Assembly (NCBI RefSeq): GCF_902652985.1
Contig: NC_047023.1
Span: 23,808,001-23,872,000 of the forward strand
DNA length: 64,000 nucleotides
From: Pecten maximus
Lineage: Eukaryota
Direction of reading: 5' to 3'
The notes beneath the pieces were generated by a model. It worked only from the letters and a program-made list of their open reading frames with translations. It was not told where the DNA came from and searched no databases. Positions 1-12,100 of this stretch are shown here, piece after piece. Position numbers and translations under genes: made by a program. Each line of letters starts with the position of its first letter. Within the stretch, counting starts at the first letter, position 1.

Positions 1-243
1 GCCATGTTGTTTTCAGATTGGTCTCAAAACGCAATATGCATAACTAGGCACCAAGGGGAACCTACATATGAAATTTGAGAAAGATCCCTTCAGTACTTTC
101 TGAGAAATAGCGATAACAAGAATTGTTTACGGACGGAGGGACGGACGGACGGACGGACGGACGGACGGAGGGACGGACGGACGACGGACCACGGACGCAG
201 GGCGATTTGAACAGCCCACCATCTGATGATGGTGGGCTAAAAA
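1..243 (-). mobile_element. Non-autonomous Helentron/HINE-type element, 5' end (partial), in an NRK intron
   Basis: (GGAC)n microsatellite at ~129-197, then the palindrome agcccaccatc-tgat-gatggtgggct and an A-run. This is the reverse complement of the usual HINE 5' end (T-run, subterminal IR/hairpin, GTCC microsatellite). Confidence 0.75.
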
Positions 244-401: not shown

Positions 402-3400
402 CTTCTTCTTCTCCAACAGACAGTTCTGTTAACCTCCAGAAAATATCTTTTGTCAAACACTTCATTAAGAGGTCTGAAATGTAAAACATAAAACATTTTC
501 ATATACATAGAAGTTCACATGTATTGCTGCAATTATGTATTGGTCGTCTGAACAGTGCATGAATTTAAATGTGGTCTTTATATGATTACAATGTTTTGTC
601 AATATCAGTTGTATTAGATATATATGTATGATACTTTCTTCAAATTAAAAACCACTTTTTTTTTAAAAATTTGATTAACAAGTAAAATTGTAAAAAAAAC
701 ATCATTACTTGTAGTTGTAAAGAAGAAAACCGTCTACTAAAAGGATGGGGATGCTGTGATCGCCTGGAGAATGGGTCTCTTTGGGTCTGGCCCACTGCTG
801 AATATTTCTAACAAGTTTATCCATCTCCATGGCTTTCATTTCTGAAAAAGTTTTAAAACAAAAATATGAACTGAGAAAGTATAATCACATTTACACTATT
901 CGTATTTGTGATGTGTAAGCATGTATCACATAATATAAGGAAGGTAACTAAATATATATATGTATATATTCTTTATTCAAATCAAGCCATGATAATAAGT
1001 TCAGTGTATTAAAATTAGTACACAATGGAACAAGAGGCCTAATGGGCCTGACATACTAACCTGGTTCTCAGACTCTGCCTTTCAGCTAATTAGAAGAACT
1101 TGTTAAATATGTGTGTTAACAAATTTGACCACTGTAACCTTGAATATGAACATGAATATCAAGGTCATGATAAATTTTTTTTCACAAACTTTGTCAGGTG
1201 TCATCCAAGACACCCACTTATTAGCCATATGTCCTGATTCTAGACCTTTTAGTTAATCAGAATTGAAGCTGTTTGAATGTTTTAACAAATTTGGCCCCTA
1301 AGACCTTGAGTTTCTTTCGAATTTCATTTCTTTTTGCAAATCTTATGGAGCTGCATCCCAGGAATCAACCAGTCAAATATCTTAAGGCCTTTTGGTTTTT
1401 CAGAGGAAGAATGATTAAAGGAAAAAGTTGATGCTGAGAGGACAATAGAGAGGCGATTGATGTCACACCACAGCCTTAGCTCACCTGACCCTTTAAGGAC
1501 CAGTTAGTTAGCTTCAAACACATGAACATACCATCCCAATTTTCATGATTCAGTTCTGGAATCCATGTCAGTCTTTTATCCCCTGGTTCCTGAAATTAAA
1601 TAGTCCATACATTAACACATTACACATGCTGATGCAGTTGAAGAGGAAGATTTTTTACCTCTTTTTCTTTTCTCATTTTCAATGCAGATGCTTATCATTA
1701 TAAAGAAAAAATAATATGCATCATAGATAATATAACATACAAAGGGGGTGGGTGGTTTGGAGATAAGGGTGTAGTGTATATAGTAATTGCTTTTTCTGTA
1801 CATTTGCTTTTATTGGATCTAATTTTGTTAGAATTATCTTAATTTTTTTCTCATCTTAAATTTCCCCTTTTCATTTTTTTTTTTTTTGTAATTTGAAAAT
1901 TAGTAACAAGGGAAACCAGTGAGTATGGGAAATTTTCCATTTGATGTAGGTCATAGGTCAAAATGTAGGTTGGAGTGACATAATTTTGACAAACCACTTC
2001 ACCTACAATGTAAGTGACCCACACCCCAATTATGAAGTTCTGTCAAGTAGTGTAGGCGATTGATCATGAGCCCTGAGAAATAATTTCTTTGATGTGGTTC
2101 ATAGGTCAAAATATAGGTCAGAGTGACCTACAAAATGTAATTTTGACATATGACATGCCGCCTCAACTAGGTGAATCCAAGCCCGAAGTATGACGTGCCA
2201 GATGTTAAGAAGTGTAGGAGACAGAGCCTATATACATGTAGGTCAGTTACCTTCTTCTGAAACAGGATTCCGATGTACACATCACCGCAAGTAGGTGAAC
2301 ACAAGATCCCAAGTATGAAATGCCCAATGATGGCAAGTAATGTAGAAGATAGAGACCTGACAATTTTATTATCTTAGGAAGGTCATAGGTCAAAATGTAG
2401 GTCATAATGACCTGATTTTGACATGATGAGACACTGCATCACCTAGGTGAATCCATACCCAAAGTATGAAGTTCCAGTGTCAAGTAGTGTAGGAGACAGA
2501 GCCTATAATCAAAACAAGACATAATGTGCAGAAGGACAGATGGACGGGAGGAAGGACAAAAGGATGGAAGCCAGGCAAAAAATATATTGCCCCCTCCCCG
2601 ATGGGGGTATAATAACTAACTAACCAAATAGTAATCATCCTGATGGATAGCGGAGCAGTTTGGCAAAGCAGATAAAAGTTGTCCAACCAAAGTTGATTTA
2701 CCGCTATTTGTAGCTCTGCAAGGAAAAAGGGAATATGCTAAAATCAGAACACAAATTTAATATAATACAGAAATTTTAACACAAGTATATATAAGATTCA
2801 TAGACGAATCTTCATCTGTCAATTAAGTCAAAGGTCTTTTCCCAATCACACTTCAAATTCAACTGAATGGCCACAACTAGGGGTTCAGAACTTGAGGTGA
2901 ACCAACACATCAAGTTTAAGAAATATCTTTCTACCTCTATATATTTATATTACTTTCTTATGAAATAATTCACAATAACAAACTGCATCTGCAAATTCAG
3001 TAAACTCACAATATCAGAAGTGAATCCCCTAAATTATTCTACCTAAATACTAATAGCTCCTTTTATTTCACATTATCAAAGTATATACACGTAATTCAAA
3101 GACAGACAATTGCAAGTTTTTCATTTTTGAAATTTTCTTTGGCAATATTTATTACAATTAACAATTTCATATATCCTTTCATCCAAATCTAACATTGCTA
3201 AGAAATGTCATTGAACCATAATCAATTTTCAGTTACTTAACATTATTTAATGGTAAATTTATGAACGCAGGCTTAATATAATTATACACATCAATGGCTT
3301 TAAAATTTACAACTTGACATAGTTTTTGATAATCATCCAACAGTTGTTTGAAGTGGCGGATTGAGTTTGCATTTACAATTTGAACCTAAAAATAATTCCA

Positions 3401-5817
3401 AATATCTACAATTCCGGATGTAACTAAAGGAGCATACATTGTATGAAGTGTCCTGTTACCTAAGACAACAAATTTATATCAATGACTTGTTTTTGATAAT
3501 CATTATCATATGAAGGGAAATAGTCAAAACGCTTATAAATACTTCATATGGTATGAAATTGCAATGGTACAAAATGGACATATGGTACAAAACAACTGGC
3601 GACTTTATCCACAGACGATCAATAATGTGAAATATTGTGTTTGGCCGATAATTATATTTCCCTCATCTATGATATACATCTAACCATGAAATTGATCAGG
3701 ACTTGGAGACACTATTGTTTCTTGTTCAGATTAAACAGCTATAAAGACTTATCTAGATCTAGGCTAGATCTTTTGCTATAATAATTGAAACAGATGGCAG
3801 CAATGCAAGTATATCAAAGAAGAAGAGCCAATTGACAGTAATGATATCGAGTCGCCCAAACTTTCATATAGAATACGTCGTTGATTGGCCTAGGACAGCA
3901 TATACTATTAAAGGCCGTTCATGTCAAAAACGAGATACATTTAACGCGTTAAGCTTTAACGCGTTAACACATTTAACGCGTTAAACATAACATTTAACGC
4001 GTTAAAACTAGTTTAACGCGTTAAGTCTTAACGCGTAAAGCTTTAACATTTAACGCGTTAAATGTAGTTCTCATTTAACGCGTTAAAGACAGTTTTATCA
4101 CGTTCATAATCATTTTTACGCGTTAAATCTTAACGCGTTAAACTTTATCAGATTAACCAATCAGTTGCACCCTTGCATCAGCATTCGGATGAAAGTTCTT
4201 CAGGGAAACAGTTTAATGACAGAATATTACAGTACGCGTTGACAGAATATCAACACGTCAAAAAGAATGTTGATATCTCTGAAAACCGATTTAAACAGAG
4301 ACCGTATCAAAATAATCAATTTGTGCAATGAATCAACAATTTCTTTTTCCTCTTTCACTGTGCTTCATTCTTTTGGTCATTTGTGTATTCATGAAGGTCT
4401 GTAAGATACATTGTTGTACATTACTGTAACTGGTACATTCTGATGACGTCACATTGTTTACTGACGTTCCGAGTTGTGTATGCACTCACCGACACGAAGG
4501 TGGCATTTTGTTCTGGGATATGGTAGTTTTGTCATCTTTGAACATTGATGAGATAATACAGAACATCTCACAATATACCATGTTATAAATGCAGTTTACA
4601 GAAAACGAGATGTAGAGACTGTATTTATCACTCCAACATCCATCAGCCTACTACAAGTATTTGTCGATAGTTCGTCTATCTGGTCGGCTGCCATGGCAAC
4701 ATTGATGACAGTAAATATTCCTACAACTGGCAAATATAAAAACACGATTAGAATTTAAATTTAAAAGTAAACAGTAGTAAATTATTTAAAAGATAACAAC
4801 AACAATTACGATAGCAATAGTTGACGGTAGAGTCAATTCTCTCCAGAAAACTGGCTCTGGCAGCCATACTGTTACAAACAAAAATGTAGTCCTTTAAATA
4901 CATAGTAGATACAGGGAATTCGATTGGTCTGTTATTTTAGTCATTTTAACGCGTTAAAACAAAAGCTAAGACTTTTAACGCGTTAAATGAATGAAGCTGT
5001 TTATCACGTTAAATGCTAGCTAAGTAACAAATTTAACGCGTTAAAATTCCATGAAAACATTTAACGCGTTAAAGCTTAACGCGTTAAATGTATCTCGTTT
5101 TTGACATGAACGGCCTTTCATAATATACGGACATGACAAATAACGATGTTGTTCAGAAGTCAGATATTGGTTCAAAATTCACGACCTTTGCGAAAAATAA
5201 TAATGTGGGTGTATATTTTGTGGTATCAGTATAGTTTAACTGAATGAAAACAGATTAATTTTAAAATGTTAAGAAGTAACTGATCATGATTAGGTTGGGG
5301 AAAACCGACAACTTGCGTATGATACATGAATTTGTGTATTATACGCCAGTTCGAGTATGGATTTGTTAATTAAAATAGACAAAATTGATTAAACAGTAAA
5401 TTTTGAAATATTTGATTTAATGGCAATTTGATTGATGACAAGGTAAATAATATTTTACTCAAATATGTTTATTGAAAGCGTTGTGATTGTCTAAAGAAAC
5501 TTGATATTACATTACCAGAAGTATTGCATCAATTTTTGGTACTTCCCAACGTTCAAACAAAAAATCATAACAGTGATTTTGGCTATATTTAGTCACAAAA
5601 CTATGTCGTACTCGTTTTATAAAATAATAACATACAAGAGTACATACTCTTCTATGTTATATTTTTTAAAACGAGTCAGGCACCTGCGGCCGTATTATAC
5701 GTATACGCAATCGCGAGTTTCCCTAACCTGATAACCTCCAATCAATGTCTGGATTATCCAAAACACATCTTACCCGGATATTCCTACAATCAATTTTCTA
5801 ATATGGTCTCCAGACAT
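402..5817 (-). CDS. NMRK1: Nicotinamide riboside kinase (NRK1/2 family), 3'-partial. Exons 5817-5774, 2715-2625, 1589-1532, 841-709, 473-402
   Basis: Spliced translation MSGDHIRKLIVGISG|ATNSGKSTLVGQLLSALPNCSAIHQDDYYL|EPGDKRLTWIPELNHENWD|EMKAMEMDKLVRNIQQW...IPILLVDGFLLYNYK|PLNEVFDKRYFLEVNRTVCWRRR. The P-loop GISGxTNSGKST, QDD and ILxxxGFLLxNYKPL motifs match NRK. All introns are GT-AG with consistent phases. Remaining exons lie left of the window. Confidence 0.93.
1029..1513 (-). mobile_element. Degenerate Helentron/HINE-type element
   Basis: Begins aacaagaggcctaatgggcct (reverse complement of the 3' hairpin plus CTTGTT end). Has agctcacctg subterminal IR near 1478 and internal gaccttga/aaggtca motifs. 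Confidence 0.65.
1905..2612 (-). mobile_element. Degenerate Helentron/HINE-type element with internal tandem repeats
   Basis: Recurrent ggtcataggtcaaaatgtaggtc units (~1950, 2097, 2381), a degenerate GGAC-like tract at ~2530-2570 and terminal hairpin ccccctccccgatggggg. Confidence 0.55.
3906..5122. mobile_element. Non-autonomous DNA transposon (MITE), IS3EU-like termini, in NRK intron 1
   Basis: 62-bp TIRs (3906-3967 and 5061-5122, 61/62 identical), TAT...ATA termini, 6-bp TSD ATATAC (3900-3905 and 5123-5128) and 13 perfect subterminal TTAACGCGTTAA palindromes. Confidence 0.9.
5292..5729. mobile_element. Old MITE with degenerate terminal inverted repeats
   Basis: Left end aggttggggaaaaccgacaacttgcgtat resembles the reverse complement of the right end, aggttagggaaactcgcgattgcgtat. 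Confidence 0.45.
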
Positions 5818-5946
5818 CGTGCACGTGTTCTCCAAGATGCGCAACAGATGTAAAAGTACATGTAGGCTAGACTGCTGCTTCATACACTGATAAATAGGCC
5901 GATTATTTCTCACAAAACTATGTTCTTTCAATTAATATGCATCATG

Positions 5947-6216
5947 CTATTTACTTTCTTGAAAGTCTACTTTATCATCTTCATCTGGACCTGTATCCGA
6001 GCCGTTTTCCTCGTTTTCGAAATGCTGAGGATTGACGTTAATGCGGTCCAGAAAAGCGGAAAGAAGACGTTTATTTAGATGGTCTGTTTGAGTTATTTTT
6101 CGCTCTGATGTTTCTTCTGTCTCGGCTGTGTCCTTTTCCTCTACAGAAACTTTTTGTAGGTCGTTTTTCAATTCAGTAACCGCCTCTTGGTCGTTCGGCC
6201 TTTCATTGTCGGCCAT
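5947..6216 (-). CDS. Intronless 89-aa acidic small protein of unknown function, directly upstream of NRK (candidate first cistron/uORF)
   Basis: Strong start context (agtATGG). Protein-like composition: acidic N- and C-terminal tails around an amphipathic core KITQTDHLNKRLLSAFLDRIN. Less AT-rich than its flanks and not in a repeat. Confidence 0.75.
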   Translation of the reverse strand: MADNERPNDQEAVTELKNDLQKVSVEEKDTAETEETSERKITQTDHLNKRLLSAFLDRINVNPQHFENEENGSDTGPDEDDKVDFQESK

Positions 6217-6448
6217 ACTGGTTTAGAGAAATATTAATTTTCGCAATAAAGAGAAAAATCGGAACGCATAAAATTAATTTTGCTGTCTTAAAAAACATAT
6301 TGACGGGTTTTAGATGAGGCGAAAATAAAATTATCCCTTTGTATTATTTTTTATTCTAAACGCAATAAAACTGGTGCTAGATTACTAGATAAACAACGAA
6401 ATAAGTAAAAGTAGATTTTCGATTGATTTTAAAGTCAAGATTGCACAA

Positions 6449-6470
6449 CCGGAAGTGATTTACCGGAAGT
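6449..6470. promoter_or_regulatory. Tandem ETS/GABP sites in a probable bidirectional promoter (small ORF/NRK leftward, CCDC124 rightward)
   Basis: CCGGAAGT at 6449-6456 and 6463-6470, between head-to-head housekeeping genes. Plus-strand splice-donor-like sites (acag/gttatgtaagt) at ~6604-6615. Confidence 0.55.
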
Positions 6471-7388
6471 TACATATTACAGCCGAAATCGAAACAACAA
6501 ACTATAGCTAACATATTTCGTTTTTAGGAGTTTATGTAATTGATACAGAACGACTGTATTGGCAGTTTGATTATTGAGTCTTGGAAGTTCCGACTTAACA
6601 ACAGGTTATGTAAGTGTATAATTTTAGACGATCGATTTCAGACAAATTAAAGACATTGCTATGTCTGTTGAACAGGTTTTAGGGGATTTCCGATTTAGAA
6701 CGAATATTCATACCCTGCCTACACTGCTCTCCGACGACGACCATCTGTCAGGAATTGTCCGTCCGTCGTCCAGAGCTACGTTATCGCAGCTAGTTCTAAT
6801 TCAGTACATAGCAATGCCAAAACTGAAAAACGCACATATGTCATTTGTTCTATATTCAATTCATTTATCTGTTTTCGTTCCTATAAGGCATGTGCACATT
6901 AAGAAAAGACTGTTAGCTACCTGATAGACGTTCTCGCTTGTCATGCGGGCCGCCATCCCCATATACGTCTAACTAATTACAGGATTTTTACTTTTTTAGT
7001 GTTTTTCTTATTTGGTTAGGGTATTTCTACCTAAACGGACCAAAATTGACTCGGAATTACCGAAACCAGGGACATATATATCTTATTATACGTCCCTGCC
7101 GAAACAGAGAAAAATGAGGCTTAAATTAGCATTATTTTCAGAGAACGGAACGAAATACATTTGTATATGTTCTACAATGCCCAACTGTATGTATCATATT
7201 ACAGGTTTAATTTTTATTTGACTGAAAAGTATTTAAAATAAATGTTTTAATCATTTGCGATATGCGGCCCGATTGTCGTCAGAGTTGAATTACCGAAATG
7301 GCAGATAATGAAATTGAAATAGATATTTTTTATGAGATAATGGTTCTTATTAGCTGATTCCTCAAAATGGCATATCTGTGGCATACGT

Positions 7389-7663
7389 TGTAGCGGAACT
7401 GGATCATCGGCGACCAGTTAGCTCAGTCGGTAGAGCATCTGACCAGTGTTCAGAGGTCCTGGGTTCGAACCCCGTTCTCGCCATGCATTTTGCCGCACGT
7501 ACTACCTTTGGTGCCGTGATCATGACCCAACCTTGTTTCAAGTGTGGTGAATACTTGACAAGGGGATACCTGAACCTGGGTTGTGAGTTGTTAAGGCTAG
7601 TGTTCGGAGGTCCCGGGTACAAACACTTGTCTGGCTGTGCATTTCTCCACTTCTACTTCTACA
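7389..7663 (+). mobile_element. TRIM-like mini LTR retroelement with tRNA-derived LTRs (Helenus-like), degenerate
   Basis: Starts TGTAG and ends CTACA. First repeat has Pol III A box (7419-7430), B box (7462-7472) and a TCTGA/TCAGA anticodon-like stem. TGGTGCCGTGA at 7509-7519 is complementary to the tRNA-His 3' end (PBS). Purine tract at 7557-7568 and a second degenerate tRNA-like copy at ~7595-7663. Confidence 0.6.
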
Positions 7664-7931: not shown

Positions 7932-8283
7932 GAGGCCAACTCAATTTGCACTCTTCTCCTTCTAGAATAAAACTTCCGGTCACTTGATTTGTAGCTTCTG
8001 CTTCTGGCAGATCTTCTACCTCTTCCGTCTCGAAACTGGAAGATTTATCTTCCAAGATGGCGGCGACCATGTTTAAGTGTGCGACATGCAGATCTCGAGT
8101 GATGAGTTTCACTAAAGAAGGATTTATGTCGCATACATGTACAGGTTTGTGTTACAGTGTTTGAAACTTGAAAACTTGTTTGTTTTAGGTTATGTTCTTC
8201 CGGCTTACTTGATTTACATATAACAGAATGCTATCTTCTGAGAAGGCTTCTCTTCTTAGAAGGGTGCAAATTGAGTTGGCCTC
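7932..8283 (+). mobile_element. Internally deleted DNA transposon (26-bp TIRs) retaining promoter motifs and a zinc-finger-like first exon
   Basis: TIR gaggccaactcaatttgcac(t/c)cttct, 25/26 identical. Inside are an ETS site acttccgg, a YY1-type caagatggcggc, and ORF 8057-8144 MAATMFKCATCRSRVMSFTKEGFMSHTCT ending at a GT donor. Confidence 0.6.
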
Positions 8284-9188
8284 AGGCCTGAGATCATATG
8301 ATGACCATGTGTCCAGGCTGATACTGCCGTTGCACACCTGCGCGAATGACAAATTTGAGGCCAGTTTACAGCCAATGTATGATCACTGTGGAACAACTAT
8401 AACTACAGCATGACATATTCTATGATGACTATATATAGAAATTATAGCTCCAAGTTATGATTCTAATTATACAACGATCACTACGGCCTGTAAAATTAAT
8501 ACACTGTACAGTAACCCTGTGACCACCACAAGTATCTCTCAATTTATTTCAGGGATCTGCAACTTCTGTATCATATAGCTAGATCAGATGTAATGGGCTG
8601 TCACTAAATAAAGGGGTGGAAGAAAATGTTTTAGAAAAATGTGCTTTATTCTGATTGTTGGATAACACCTAACTGTATTCTGATCTGTATGAAGGGAGGT
8701 AAACCTCATATCACTAATTTCAAATGAATAATTATTATTTACATATAATAACAAACCAGAAATAATAGATCACAGTCCATATTGACTGAATCTTGGATTG
8801 TTGTATCCAGTTTACTATACCCTAACTATAGGGATCATCTCAGATGGTTAAAATGCAAACTTGTATTCTAATTTGTATAGAATATTCATCTTAATTTTAC
8901 CTCAAAATGAGCATGACTGATATATCTAAGGCATAAAGTTACATAATCATGATCAATAAACTTAAAATTTAAAGGTTGCATGGGGAACAGTTCTCTCATG
9001 TGGTCACCTGTACTTTTTTATATAAGTAATTAAAGGAAAATTTCAGTTTTATGATATTTCAGACCCCCACATCAACATGGCAATGCTTTCCATCTGTCTG
9101 TTAACACTTTCGATTAATAAGATATATCGTACAAGTAAATTTTTTTTAAAACAATAATTTGCAGATTTGATTTTTAAGACCATTGAAG

Positions 9189-12100
9189 ATGCCGAAGAAA
9201 TTCAAAGGAGAAAATTCCAAGGCTGTTGAAGCAAAAGCAAGGAAAGCAGCTGTCCAGCATGCCGAGAAAGAGAAAAGAGAACAAGCTCTGGAAGATGCAT
9301 ATTGGAAAGACGATGATAAACATAACGCAAAAAAAACGCAACGGAAGGTTAGAAATAAATTTAGACCCATAGCAAGAATCTTTCTCCTGGCTTGATCTGA
9401 GGTTGTATTAGCTCTTAACATAAAAAGGACATTTTTTGCTGTCTGATCCGAGACTTGCAGAAGATTAAACATTTAAGTTTTTTTTCTGATGGTGAAATTT
9501 TTTTCTGTCGTAGACCTTACTCCATAAGCTGTAGAATATCCTTTGTATGCACCATTTCCCCAGAATGAAACAATGAGGTGCATTGAACCCTCGGTCCAAC
9601 ATTAAATTTTGAGTCTGATGTGGAACAAAAATGGCCAACAGGCAGCCATCTTTGATTTTGATAGTTGAAGTTTGTTAATTCCAGGGTTTGCATTGAAGCC
9701 ATCCCAATAGCCTTTTAAGCATAGAAAATTAAAAAGACCCCATTTTTTCTGGAAGATGATTCAAATTATTCACAAGGACCCCATTTTATCTGAAAAGGAC
9801 CCTATTTATGAAATATGCAGCGCAAACCCTGATTACTATATATCTTGAGAAGAACAGGAAGGGTATTCCTCAAACTTAATATGTTGGTTCCCCTTAATCC
9901 ATATTTGTGCCCATTCAATTTTGTGTCTGATCAGAAAAATTAAATTGGCAACAGGCAGCTTTCATGGATTTTGACATTTGAAATTAGTTATTACCTTGTC
10001 ATGACAAGGACTGAAACAATGTTTCTGAAACTTGATATGTTGGTTCGCCTGTCTATATATAGTTGTGCCCTTTTAATTTTTAGCTTGATCATAATCAGGA
10101 AAACAAGAACGCCAACAGACAGTCTGGATCTTTGATTTTGACATTTGAAGTTTCTTGTGGCTATTTCCTGGACACCTTTTTATGACTTTCTTAAGTTTCA
10201 TATATATAGGTTCTCCATAAGTCTCAGGTTTTAATTTTGACACTGATTGTAAAAATAAAATTGACAACAGGTGGCCATTCTTGATTTTGATGGTTGAAAT
10301 TTAGTATTGCTGTTTCTTGAAAAGCTGACTGGCAGGATATTTCTGAAACTTCATACTGGTATATATAAATGTTCATGGACTTAATTTATGCCTGTACAAT
10401 TTCAAGACTGATTGGAAAAAAACTTCTTGTTATGTGAATACTACATGTAAGTGTTGATGGAAGAGTAAAGAGGAGAAAAGTACATGTACAGAAAAGTTCA
10501 ACCTTACACTTACATAGAACCAATAATATACAGTGGTGGGCCAAAAAGATCTCTGGTTTTTAGCCTCTTCATGCTTATGATATATACAATGTAGTTGTGT
10601 TTCCGTGAATGGCACAAATTTCGATTTTATTATTTTGCCAAAGTTATTGCCCTTATGTTTATCATGCTTTGATATGAACTTGTACATTCTCAGTGGCATT
10701 TTGACTAGACAGTCTTGTATTTCAGTATTTATATTCTGTTGATACAATGAATATATAATGCATTATTTTTTGGCATGAGATATGCATAAATCATTATAAT
10801 TGTTCCACACTGGCAGACACCACAGCATTTGGGAGGCATGAATAAATCATCTTATTTAATTAGTACTCACTGGTATTTTGTGCAAATTTATATCCTGATG
10901 ATCAACAGAAATATAATCATTGTTTAGCAAATTTCTATAAATACTAAGTGCTTAATTTGATCTTCACTCCATGAAATAGATCAATCAGATGATAAGGTAT
11001 TCACAGTGGATGAATAAATAGCAACATGTAATTACAACAAATAAAATGTGTGAGACATTTGGGAGTAAAATATTATACTATGATGTTATATTCAGGATGA
11101 CAAAGAAAAGAAAAGACTGGAGCAGCTGGATAGGAAAAAAGAATTACAAAGACTTCACGATGAAGAAATGAATAGCATCAAGTCAAAGGCTTCCACAGGA
11201 GGGAGTTCAAAGGTCACTCAGTCTCAGATACAGAACCAGATTGCAATGGAAAAGAGATTGGCACAAGGTAAGTTTGAAGTGTGGAAGTTTTGGTTTGTAA
11301 AGTTGAAAAGAAAGTACAGATAAAATATAGTTACTGTTAGTATTTATATAGACAATAATTAATTTATTTACAATTAATAACATATACATGTACATAGATA
11401 TTGTGTATAACTTACATGGCATGGTAGGCCTATAGTCAGAGCTATAGCCAAGTTGTTGACGTTCTGGTTTTTCTCATTGTTGGTTTCTTAAGATCACTAT
11501 ACACAAGTTACATGTATTATTGCTTAAAATCAGAGGAAATAATTTTTCTCCTGCCCCAAAAATTACAGTAACTCAGGTGGAGTTGAGAATGGTTAGAGAT
11601 GTTGTTTTTTAGTTCACCTGTCCTGCCCAGCCCATGGACTTCTTGTTTTCTTTCTTCATGACATGCTCATGCAATGTTCAAAATCAGCTGTCCATCTTTG
11701 GAATTAAAAATTAAGGCTACAAAGTTCCTTTACATTAACATTTTCCAAATATTACACCACTTATAGACAAGAGTCAATATGTGACTGGAGGTCTTCACAG
11801 TCCTACTGGTTAATTACTGAATTTACCACCATCTGTATAAGAGAAGGATTTGGAAACTTTTTACAACAGAAAAAATCATTTATGGAAATAAGAAAAAGTA
11901 CACCCTGACATGATATTACTGTTTCTGAACATTGAAAACCATTCACATGTGGTAATGTCTTCTCATCTAATTATACTCCATGCATGGGGTATCAGCTCTA
12001 CTATGAAGGCATATTTTGTGACACTTATATTATAATTAGTGACACTACTGGTATTTGCTAATATGAAAAGTGGACTTGTGAACATTTTGAATTGATAGAA

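What the first reader, a model, noticed from the sequence alone, without database searches (positions are those of the whole stretch)
5774..6216. Candidate bicistronic unit: an uncharacterised 89-aa protein directly upstream of nicotinamide riboside kinase
Seen: an intronless ORF with a strong start context (agtATGG) ends at 5947, only 129 nt before the NRK ATG (5817), on the same strand and in the same frame. The spacer has no AATAAA or ATTAAA and leaves little room for a terminator plus promoter, while the obvious promoter motifs (tandem ETS) lie upstream of the small ORF. The peptide looks real, with acidic tails around an amphipathic helix TQTDHLNKRLLSAFLDRIN. I have an unverified impression that this motif recurs in small unnamed eukaryotic proteins. 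Known precedents for conserved-uORF bicistronic mRNAs are ASDURF-ASNSD1 and SNURF-SNRPN. Inference: one mRNA encodes both proteins, with NRK made by leaky scanning or reinitiation, giving translational control of NAD+ salvage or co-production of a partner microprotein.
Basis: partly seen in the sequence, partly recalled or inferred. Interest (0 to 1): 0.8.

Follow-up and report, generated by a model that had tools for sequence, protein, structure and literature searches.

The report
Two-protein mRNA: microprotein plus NRK
In this mollusc genome one spliced messenger RNA carries a conserved, never-described 89-residue microprotein followed by the animal's only nicotinamide riboside kinase gene, and the same pairing (down to overlapping stop/start codons, and a spliced fusion in mussels) recurs in related species.

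Summary
An 89-codon ORF (6216-5947, minus strand) ends 129 nt before the start codon of nicotinamide riboside kinase (NRK) exon 1 (5817-5774).

The bicistronic reading is supported. In four RNA data sets from four studies, one assembled contig runs from 6210-6232 through the small ORF, spacer and NRK exon 1. It is then spliced (GT..AG, 3058 nt removed) to NRK exons 2 and 3.

The small ORF is a real protein. 413 cluster representatives were found, nearly all of the 150 listed being 63-125 aa, with a near-invariant core [RK]E[IL]TQTDHLNK[KR]LLxxFLxR[IL]N. Named members come from bivalves, a snail, an insect and a choanoflagellate. There is no Pfam family, no solved structure and no paper.

The NRK linkage recurs in at least 13 other sequences. 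Stop-to-start spacing is -4 nt (ATGA overlap), 10, 13, 32, 91, 139 and 179 nt, and 1-6 kb in four. Mytilus splices the two into one 279-280 aa protein.

How NRK is translated is not shown. There is no AUG depletion, and the window has seven intervening AUGs, so I favour reinitiation or an internal start site. The microprotein's function is also unknown. It is one amphipathic helix between acidic tails and carries a TQT motif like LC8 clients.

This is a new, apparently undescribed example of a known kind of gene organisation.

The parts
6449..6470 (.). Two CCGGAAGT (ETS-type) cores. They lie between the two divergent transcription units, so this is probably a shared bidirectional promoter.
   Evidence: Sequence. 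CCDC124-like exon 1 contigs begin at 6469-6508 on the plus strand, and the small-ORF/NRK contigs end at 6210-6232 on the minus strand.
6217..6232 (-). Observed 5' leader of the bicistronic mRNA, 16 nt or less in the contigs. This is a lower bound for the true 5' end.
   Evidence: Contig ends lie at 6232, 6226, 6221 and 6210 in four runs. An Illumina adapter directly follows 6221 in X5. There is no coverage over 6307-6447.
5947..6216 (-). First cistron: the 89-aa acidic microprotein, stop codon included.
   Evidence: ORF. Homologues. Single copy in the genome. Fully covered by RNA contigs.
6037..6102 (-). Codons 39-60: the conserved core RKITQTDHLNKRLLSAFLDRIN, with a TQT(D) motif followed by an amphipathic helix.
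   Evidence: Invariant columns. Third codon positions vary in 22 of 22 codons, second positions in 2 of 22. AlphaFold2 predicts a helix at residues 43-61 with pLDDT about 90.
5818..5946 (-). 129-nt intercistronic spacer. It holds four AUGs. One (5883) is in frame with NRK. One (5861) opens a 23-codon ORF that overlaps the NRK start.
   Evidence: The spacer is not conserved against the nearest relative L008.
5774..5817 (-). Second cistron, NRK exon 1 (MSGDHIRKLIVGIS plus two bases of the next Gly codon), followed by a GT donor at 5773-5772.
   Evidence: Sequence. The splice joint 5774 to 2715 appears in four runs. Homologous exon 1 is present in relatives.
2716..5773 (-). NRK intron 1 (3058 nt, GT..AG). 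It contains repeat-derived sequence.
   Evidence: The joint 'skips 3058, CT..AC on the plus strand' appears in all four runs.
2625..2715 (-). NRK exon 2 (P-loop, ATNSGKSTL...QDDYYL).
   Evidence: RNA contig pieces. The only PDB hit is human NRK1, E 2.3e-5.
1532..1589 (-). NRK exon 3 (EPGDKRLTWIPELNHENWD).
   Evidence: The loose end of the contigs beyond 2624 reads on into this exon. tblastn gives 71% identity to Mytilus NRK.
709..841 (-). NRK exon 4 (approximate ends). Further exons lie at about 400-474 and beyond the left edge of the window.
   Evidence: Translation. The only PDB hit is human NRK1, E 0.0024. The whole-genome search places the last exons just outside the window.

Best explanation
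The locus is one transcription unit. Its mature mRNA, about 1.2-1.3 kb, carries two conserved coding regions.

**Structure of the mRNA (shown unless marked inferred)**
- Transcription starts a few to a few tens of nucleotides upstream of 6216. I infer that it is driven by a bidirectional ETS-type promoter shared with the divergent CCDC124-like gene.
- The first AUG has a strong context and opens the 89-aa microprotein. That this AUG is the one used is inferred.
- NRK begins 129 nt after the microprotein's stop. It is the only NRK gene in the genome, and its exon 1 is spliced onward to exons 2, 3 and beyond.

**The microprotein (conservation shown, role inferred)**
- It belongs to an old holozoan family, and the selection acts on the protein sequence.
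- It is predicted to be a single 19-residue amphipathic helix (residues 43-61, with T42 and the TQTD motif at its N-terminal end) between disordered acidic tails.
- I read it as a portable binding module. The same module is spliced onto NRK in mussels and embedded in Cdc123 in a choanoflagellate.

**NRK translation (inferred)**
- NRK is most likely made by ribosomes that resume after finishing the first ORF (termination-reinitiation).
- A possible addition is ribosomes that miss the cap-proximal first AUG and pass through the tiny out-of-frame ORFs.
- Either way, NRK output would be low and tied to the cell's reinitiation capacity, and the two products would be made from the same message.
For: **One transcript**
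- In runs X1, X2, X5 and X6 (four studies; X6 is a declared RNA-seq library), a single contig of 1158-1297 nt covers 6210/6221/6226/6232 down to 5774. It then joins 2715-2624 with the 3058-nt GT..AG intron removed and reads on into exon 3.
- No other joint enters exon 2.

**Real microprotein**
- 17 word-search homologues share an invariant core.
- A profile search found 413 representatives at E<=1e-3 and 71 at E<=1e-10.
- Across 10 loci the third codon position varies in 22 of 22 core codons and the second in 2 of 22.
- AlphaFold2 predicts a helix at residues 43-61 with pLDDT about 90.

**Linkage in relatives (stop-to-start spacing)**
- L004: -4 nt, an ATGA overlap.
- L014: 10 nt.
- L031: 13 nt.
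- L028: 32 nt.
- L034: 91 nt, with an uninterrupted 188-aa NRK ORF on a 1583-nt cDNA-like contig.
- L008: 139 nt.
- L026: 179 nt.
- L002, L003 (Mactra), L037 and L015: 1-6 kb.

**Fusion and copy number**
- Mytilus 'NRK1-like isoform X1' is microprotein plus NRK in one chain. Isoform X2 uses a donor about 17-18 nt further on, which restores a stop in the microprotein frame.
- NRK and the small ORF are each single copy here.
- NRK identity: window exons 2 and 4 hit only human NRK1 in the PDB. The Mytilus orthologue scores E 3e-33.
Against: - Assembled contigs can merge overlapping transcripts. They show neither starts nor ends, so a second start site inside 5818-6216, or a short small-ORF-only mRNA (AGTAAA at 5955), is not excluded.
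- Seven AUGs lie between the two start codons in the window, and synonymous shuffles show no AUG depletion in any species. Simple leaky scanning is therefore unsupported.
- Established knowledge is that reinitiation after an 89-codon ORF is normally inefficient.
- The spacer shows no conserved element against L008.
- In several relatives the two ORFs are kilobases apart. Mactra has AATAAA about 100 nt after the small ORF.
- The small ORF stands without NRK in some relatives: L005 lies between UcrQ and BRE1-like exons, and L033 and L040 show no NRK downstream. The pairing is therefore not obligatory.
- There is no translation evidence for either ORF.
Confidence: 0.72

Rival explanations
1. There are two overlapping but separate mRNAs. 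The microprotein mRNA and an NRK mRNA each have their own start site, the NRK one lying inside or just after the small ORF. The RNA contig merely merges them, and NRK protein comes mainly from the shorter monocistronic message.
For: - Contigs cannot show starts or ends (caveats).
- AGTAAA sits at 5955.
- In Mactra, L002, L015 and L037 the ORFs are 1-6 kb apart.
- Mytilus has an isoform X3 with a different N-terminus.
- Seven intervening AUGs make downstream initiation from the long mRNA inefficient.
Against: - The ATGA overlap and the 10-32 nt spacers in four relatives leave no room for a promoter.
- L034 carries both complete ORFs on one cDNA-like contig.
- Mytilus splices the ORFs together, so the upstream start site certainly serves NRK there.
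- Only one joint enters exon 2 in four runs.
Confidence: 0.2
2. The microprotein is a client of the dynein light chain LC8 (DYNLL) hub. The invariant TQT would dock as a beta-strand in the LC8 dimer groove, and the following helix would pair two copies.
For: - T42, Q43 and T44 are nearly invariant (90% or more) and D45 is invariant across 130 members.
- TQT is the canonical LC8 anchor, and Asp is common at +2 (PMC6607443).
- One relative carries three tandem copies of the unit, and a choanoflagellate Cdc123 carries two. Such multivalency is typical of LC8 clients.
- The genome encodes several intact LC8 genes.
Against: - Position -2 is a bulky Ile or Leu and -3 is usually Glu, both disfavoured in binders.
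- AlphaFold2 puts Q43-D45 at the start of a confident helix rather than in a disordered strand.
- T-x-x-D is also a classical helix N-capping box (established knowledge), which would explain its conservation without LC8.
- The conserved stretch is 20 residues long, far more than an 8-residue LC8 motif.
Confidence: 0.2
3. The microprotein acts directly on NRK as a subunit, regulator or localiser. That would be why the two are kept on one message.
For: - The Mytilus in-frame fusion is a 'Rosetta stone' case.
- The linkage is kept in at least 13 other sequences.
Against: - The family is found beyond molluscs, in an insect and a choanoflagellate, where linkage to NRK could not be examined.
- In L005, L033 and L040 the microprotein gene stands without NRK nearby.
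- The same module is embedded in an unrelated enzyme, Cdc123, in Stephanoeca. This suggests a general tag rather than an NRK-specific partner.
- No binding test was run.
Confidence: 0.3
4. The small ORF is only a regulatory upstream ORF, or a chance ORF, and its peptide does not matter.
For: Its position upstream of the NRK start necessarily lowers NRK initiation.
Against: - The protein-level conservation is extreme, with saturated synonymous change.
- Hundreds of homologues exist across phyla, many not next to NRK.
Confidence: 0.02

Closest known systems
ASDURF-ASNSD1 bicistronic mRNA (animals)
   Same: A conserved microprotein of roughly 90-100 aa is encoded upstream of, and on the same mRNA as, a conserved enzyme-like main ORF. 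Both ORFs are under protein-level selection.
   Different: - The proteins are unrelated.
- The upstream ORF here ends before the main ORF in the window, but overlaps it (ATGA) or is spliced to it in relatives.
- Translation of both products is not demonstrated here.
- The comparison rests on my knowledge of the literature, not on a test.
SNURF-SNRPN bicistronic transcript (mammals)
   Same: A small upstream protein and a downstream protein are encoded by one spliced transcript from one promoter.
   Different: That locus is mammal-specific and imprinted, and its ORFs lie on different exons. Here both start codons lie in exon 1, and the pairing appears across molluscs and unnamed relatives.
Termination-reinitiation coupling at overlapping stop/start codons (calicivirus VP1/VP2, influenza B M1/BM2; AUGA/UAAUG type)
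   Same: Relative L004 has ATGA, with the NRK start overlapping the microprotein stop. L014, L031 and L028 have gaps of 10-32 nt. This is the geometry that the mechanism uses.
   Different: - The window itself has a 129-nt gap with four AUGs.
- No conserved TURBS-like element was found. UGGGA occurs in some relatives only as a by-product of Trp-Glu/Asp codons and is absent from the window.
- The mechanism is untested.
Mytilus 'nicotinamide riboside kinase 1-like isoform X1' (RefSeq XP_076105253.1, XP_071170386.1, XP_063434168.1)
   Same: It has the same two modules in the same order and the same divergent CCDC124 neighbour. The N-terminal 85 residues are a member of the microprotein family.
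   Different: In mussels a donor inside the microprotein tail removes its stop, which yields a single 279-280 aa chain. The window has two in-frame stops, and its RNA contigs show no such splice.
LC8 (DYNLL) client motifs
   Same: A TQT anchor followed by Asp, a disordered acidic context, and multivalent copies in some relatives.
   Different: The residues flanking the anchor are unfavourable, the motif is predicted to start a helix, and no binding evidence exists.

Membership tests
Eukaryotic bicistronic mRNA with a conserved upstream microprotein ORF | Both ORFs lie on one mature, spliced transcript | tested here: met
   One contig per run in four runs from four studies spans 6210-6232 down to 5774 and is spliced to exons 2 and 3. 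This is contig-level evidence, not single-molecule evidence.
Eukaryotic bicistronic mRNA with a conserved upstream microprotein ORF | The upstream ORF is conserved as a protein | tested here: met
Eukaryotic bicistronic mRNA with a conserved upstream microprotein ORF | The arrangement is conserved in other species | tested here: met
   Same-strand, small-ORF-first pairing occurs in L002, L003, L004, L008, L013, L014, L015, L026, L028, L031, L034 and L037. It is absent in L005, L033 and L040.
Eukaryotic bicistronic mRNA with a conserved upstream microprotein ORF | Both ORFs are translated from that mRNA | not testable with these tools
   No ribosome profiling or proteomics was available.
Eukaryotic bicistronic mRNA with a conserved upstream microprotein ORF | No promoter or poly(A) site lies between the ORFs | tested here: inconclusive
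   The spacer has no AATAAA or ATTAAA, but AGTAAA sits at 5955. Contigs cannot show starts or ends.
Nicotinamide riboside kinase (NRK1/NMRK1) | N-terminal P-loop G-x-x-x-x-G-K-[ST] | tested here: met
   GISG|ATNSGKST is split over exons 1 and 2.
Nicotinamide riboside kinase (NRK1/NMRK1) | Sequence similarity to solved NRK1, colinear along the chain | tested here: met
   Exon 2 matches 2qg6 residues 12-39, E 2.3e-5. Exon 4 matches residues 59-106, E 0.0024. Both have no other PDB hits. The Mytilus orthologue scores E 3e-33.
Termination-reinitiation (overlapping stop/start) coupling | Stop and restart codons overlap or lie within a few tens of nucleotides | tested here: not met
   The window gap is 129 nt with four AUGs. 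The feature is met in relatives L004 (-4), L014 (10), L031 (13) and L028 (32).
Termination-reinitiation (overlapping stop/start) coupling | A conserved upstream RNA element that holds the ribosome (TURBS-like) | tested here: not met
   The window ORF has no UGGGA, read directly. The spacer and the ORF tail are not conserved against L008.
LC8 (DYNLL) client | TQT anchor | tested here: met
   T42, Q43 and T44 are at least 90% conserved in 130 members.
LC8 (DYNLL) client | Favourable flanks (H-bonding residue at -4, basic at -3, no bulky hydrophobic at -2) in a disordered segment | tested here: not met
   The flanks are R(-4), E/K(-3) and I/L(-2). PMC6607443 lists a bulky -2 residue and high charge as disfavoured. 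AlphaFold2 starts a helix at Q43.
LC8 (DYNLL) client | Physical binding to LC8 | not testable with these tools
   This needs ITC or a pull-down.

The most novel reading that the evidence does not exclude
An ancient holozoan microprotein family has escaped annotation. It is a single helix that serves as a portable docking tag, possibly for a hub such as LC8. In the lineage leading to molluscs and some unnamed relatives it became operon-like, coupled to the sole NAD-salvage kinase NRK. The ATGA and 10-32 nt forms would then be genuine cellular examples of termination-reinitiation after a long (about 90-codon) ORF. The mussel fusion would show that the tag works on NRK itself.
Probability: 0.25. 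Interest if true: 0.85.

Novelty: new member of a known kind. Interest (0 to 1): 0.68.

Why it matters
- **A rare kind of gene organisation.** Conserved two-protein mRNAs are rare in animals, and each has taught something about translation control or about hidden microproteins.
- **A natural series for experiments.** The same gene pair is seen overlapping, 10-180 nt apart, kilobases apart and spliced into one chain. This makes it a good system for asking how a second long ORF gets translated in an animal cell.
- **An unannotated protein family.** The microprotein family has hundreds of cluster representatives, with named members from an insect, molluscs and a choanoflagellate. It has no Pfam model, no structure and no literature, and standard annotation misses it or merges it into NRK.
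- **A possible control on NAD+ salvage.** The downstream gene is the only NRK in the genome, so any control exerted by the first ORF bears directly on NAD+ salvage from nicotinamide riboside.

Tried and rejected
- **Family and structure searches.** Pfam gave nothing for the 89-aa protein or for 130 family members. A PDB profile search and the ESM Atlas gave nothing usable.
- **Literature.** Full-text searches for the core peptide strings, for 'nicotinamide riboside kinase' with 'bicistronic', and for NMRK1 with 'upstream open reading frame' found nothing relevant.
- **Earlier scan notes.** None exist for this place.
- **Complex prediction.** The microprotein core (residues 28-72, two copies) was folded with an LC8 dimer encoded in this genome (L017:1489-1755). 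The job returned no verdict. It is evidence neither for nor against binding.
- **Leaky scanning.** I tested for AUG depletion between the two start codons using synonymous-codon shuffles in eight linked loci. None was significant (lowest P 0.08, L031). The window and L008 each have seven intervening AUGs.
- **Read-through fusion in the window.** Rejected. Two in-frame stops lie between the ORFs.
- **TURBS-like UGGGA.** It is present only where the tail encodes Trp-Glu/Asp, and it is absent from the window, L008 and L014. I regard it as a coding by-product.
- **Other NRK fusions.** Eight longer NRK homologues, including Lingula, ticks and mammals, carry no microprotein motif.
- The taxa of the unnamed metagenome and Logan contigs could not be determined. 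The nearest named NRK to L034 is Lingula at 47% identity.
Full report
**1. What is in the sequence**

All features below lie on the minus strand.

- An ATG at 6216 opens an 89-codon ORF that ends with TAG at 5949-5947.
- After 129 nt, an ATG at 5817 opens a 44-nt coding exon. It encodes MSGDHIRKLIVGIS plus two bases of the next Gly codon and ends at 5774 before GTAAG.
- The next exon (2715-2625) completes that Gly codon and continues ATNSGKSTL...PNCSAIHQDDYYL. Further exons follow at about 1589-1532, 841-709 and 474-400.
Searched one at a time, exon 2 and exon 4 hit nothing in the PDB except human nicotinamide riboside kinase 1, at colinear positions (E 2.3e-5 and 0.0024).
- The Mytilus orthologue matches human NRK1 at E 3e-33.
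- The spacer has no AATAAA or ATTAAA. The variant AGTAAA overlaps the last codons of the small ORF at 5955.
- The two ATGs share a frame, but TAG and a TAA five codons later separate them.
- The small ORF's AUG has A at -3 and G at +4.
- Two CCGGAAGT cores lie at 6449-6456 and 6463-6470.

**2. RNA evidence**

The stretch 5760-6460 is held by 18 listed runs, half or more of its sampled words in each, from 7 studies of one organism. I laid four runs from four studies on 2500-6700.

- In each run one contig (1158-1297 nt) covers the genome without interruption from 6232, 6210, 6226 or 6221 down to 5774.
- Each contig then jumps to 2715 and runs to 2624. The jump skips 3058 nt, with ends CT..AC on the plus strand, which is GT..AG on the minus strand.
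- Each contig continues with letters that match exon 3.
- The removed intron shows that these contigs derive from spliced RNA. One of the runs is a declared RNA-seq library.
- The small ORF, the spacer and NRK exons 1-3 are thus joined in the assembled transcript. No other joint enters exon 2.
- The contig 5' ends cluster within 22 nt. In run X5 an Illumina adapter follows position 6221 directly, and coverage is zero over 6307-6447.
- The observed leader before the first AUG is therefore very short (16 nt or less), although contigs can fall short of the true end.
- Two variants appear in the contigs of runs X5 and X6. By my codon reading, 6108 changes Ser37 to Pro, which is the residue seen in relatives, and 6124 is synonymous. 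The ORF stays intact.

Limits: contigs can merge overlapping transcripts. They show neither starts, ends nor abundance.

**3. The small ORF is a real, old protein**

- The word search found 17 homologues of 82-150 aa. They share 15 invariant residues within RxITQTDHLNKxLLxxFLxxxN.
- Across ten loci, the third codon position varies in all 22 core codons and the second in only 2. Pairwise codon differences are 544 synonymous against 94 non-synonymous. This is the signature of strong selection on the protein.
- A profile search of 1.84 billion cluster representatives found 413 at E<=1e-3 and 71 at E<=1e-10. Nearly all of the 150 listed are 63-125 aa.
- Named members:

| Organism | Group | Name given by the source |
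|---|---|---|
| Mactra antiquata | bivalve | hypothetical protein |
| Candidula unifasciata | land snail | unnamed protein product |
| Trichogramma pretiosum, T. kaykai | insects | uncharacterized / hypothetical protein |
| Stephanoeca diplocostata | choanoflagellate | none; Pfam D123 (Cdc123 family) |

- In the choanoflagellate, two copies of the motif sit in the acidic loop of the Cdc123-family protein.
- One unnamed relative has three tandem copies of the unit.
- None of 130 members matches any Pfam family. No solved structure matches. No paper in the library holds the core peptide.
- With the family alignment, AlphaFold2 predicts one confident helix at residues 43-61 (pLDDT about 90). The rest is mostly low-confidence and largely without secondary structure.
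- Many members carry an acidic-aromatic patch in the C-terminal tail, such as EDWE, DPWE or EDFE. The window has VDFQE.

**4. The pairing with NRK recurs**

I looked downstream of the small ORF in every fetched contig. NRK exon 1 lies on the same strand in the loci below.

| Locus | Gap from small-ORF stop to NRK ATG | Note |
|---|---|---|
| L004 | -4 nt | ATGA: the NRK start overlaps the stop |
| L014 | 10 nt | |
| L031 | 13 nt | |
| L028 | 32 nt | |
| L034 | 91 nt | |
| window | 129 nt | |
| L008 | 139 nt | nearest relative |
| L026 | 179 nt | |
| L002 | about 1 kb | |
| L003 (Mactra) | about 1.8 kb | |
| L037 | 3.3 kb | |
| L015 | 6.2 kb | |

- L034 is a 1583-nt contig that carries the small ORF, the 91-nt spacer (which has no AUG) and an uninterrupted 188-aa NRK ORF. 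This is the layout of a bicistronic cDNA. Its nearest named NRK is that of the brachiopod Lingula, at 47% identity.
- In three Mytilus species, RefSeq annotates 'NRK1-like isoform X1' (279-280 aa). This is the microprotein fused in frame to NRK.
- The Mytilus locus shows how the fusion arises. A donor (A|GTAAGA) inside the microprotein tail splices to the exon encoding LKNGIKLKNVFIIGISG. An alternative donor about 17-18 nt further on (isoform X2) shifts the frame, so the microprotein frame stops at TAA early in the next exon and the NRK frame starts at an out-of-frame AUG inside the microprotein tail.
- Mytilus also has a divergent CCDC124 gene upstream, as the window does.
- The pairing is not universal. 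In L005 the small ORF lies between a UcrQ gene and BRE1-like exons. L033 and L040 show no NRK for 3.5-7.8 kb downstream.
- In this genome both the small ORF and NRK are single copy.

**5. How it most likely works**

- **Shown:** one spliced assembled transcript carries both ORFs, both ORFs are conserved, and the order and strand are conserved.
- **Inferred, microprotein:** the first AUG, in strong context in all eight tightly linked loci (A or G at -3, G at +4 in seven), makes the microprotein.
- **Inferred, NRK:** translation from the same mRNA needs a special route.
  - Simple leaky scanning has no support. The window and L008 each have seven AUGs between the two starts, and synonymous shuffles show no AUG depletion in any locus.
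  - The ATGA overlap and the 10-32 nt gaps in four relatives are the geometry of termination-reinitiation. I take that as the most likely ancestral route.
  - In the window, five of the seven intervening AUGs open ORFs of only 3-12 codons. The very short leader could also let some ribosomes miss the first AUG. Serial short-ORF reinitiation is therefore a possible variant.
  - I found no conserved RNA element in the spacer.
  - An internal start site producing a monocistronic NRK mRNA remains the main rival, at about 0.2.
- **Role of the microprotein:** the mussel fusion argues that the module can act in cis on NRK. The Cdc123 insertion in a choanoflagellate and the NRK-free loci argue instead for a portable docking helix with its own partner.
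- **The TQT-Asp motif:** it matches the LC8 anchor, but its flanks are unfavourable (PMC6607443) and it is predicted to cap a helix. I rate LC8 binding at about 0.2.

**6. Comparison with what is known**

This is the ASDURF-ASNSD1 / SNURF-SNRPN kind of gene: a conserved microprotein upstream of a conserved main ORF. I found no description of this pair or of the microprotein family. In mussels the sequence is public, but it is labelled as an NRK isoform. I file the locus as a new member of a known kind. It has two unusual aspects: the full natural series from overlap to fusion, and an unannotated holozoan protein family.

**7. Organism**

The assembly size (918,306,378 bases in 3983 contigs) fits my recollection of a published scallop genome, and the nearest named relatives are bivalves. 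I did not test the identity of the organism.

**8. Verdict**

The translation route and the microprotein's function remain open. Interest is 0.68.

Noticed in passing
window 6469-6609 (+) and about 9176-9347 (+): A divergent neighbour gene. Exon 1 (non-coding, donor GTAAGT at 6610) is spliced in RNA contigs to an exon beginning ...ATGCCGAAGAAATTCAAAGG (MPKKFKGENSKAVEAKARK...EDAYWKDDDKH). From memory, this is the N-terminus of CCDC124. Mytilus has a Pfam-confirmed Ccdc124 gene in the same head-to-head position (L013 1454-4293).
   Followed up: partly
window 7412-7483 (+): A tRNA-Thr (AGT) gene or tRNA-derived element lies inside the first intron of the CCDC124-like gene.
   Followed up: partly
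window 3950-4150 and 4950-5110 (NRK intron 1): Two blocks of many short TTAACGCGTTAA-type palindromic repeats lie in opposite orientation, about 1 kb apart. They look like the ends of a foldback or MITE-like element. RNA contigs from other copies lie partly on this region, with joints at 3966/4138, 4174/4206 and 4234/4524.
   Followed up: no
window 5610-5690: A near-perfect inverted repeat (aaaaaatataacatagaagagtatgtactcttgtatgttattatttt) lies just inside NRK intron 1. Very short contigs of high depth map here, suggesting a repeated element.
   Followed up: no
window about 7975-8145 (+): Inside the CCDC124-like intron there is an ACTTCCGG motif. It is followed by CAAGATGGCGGCGACC and an open exon (MAATMFKCATCRSRVMSFTKEGFMSHTCT) that ends at a GT donor. 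This may be a nested gene or another first exon.
   Followed up: no
window 130-200: A (CCGT)n-type microsatellite lies within an NRK intron, next to repeat-like sequence.
   Followed up: no
P0040 (Stephanoeca diplocostata) and P0052: The microprotein core motif occurs once or twice inside the acidic loop of Cdc123-family (D123) proteins. This is a second, independent fusion context for the module.
   Followed up: partly
G000 contig C8, 34.87-34.91 Mb: At least five intact intronless LC8 (dynein light chain, PF01221) ORFs are clustered within about 40 kb. More copies lie on C8 at 14.01 Mb, on C11 and on C12.
   Followed up: no
C-terminal tails of family members (for example L002, L003, L004): The frequent Trp-Glu/Asp in the tail necessarily writes UGGGA in the mRNA 20-60 nt before the stop. 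This is the core of the viral reinitiation motif. It is absent from the window, L008 and L014, so it is probably a coincidence of coding.
   Followed up: partly
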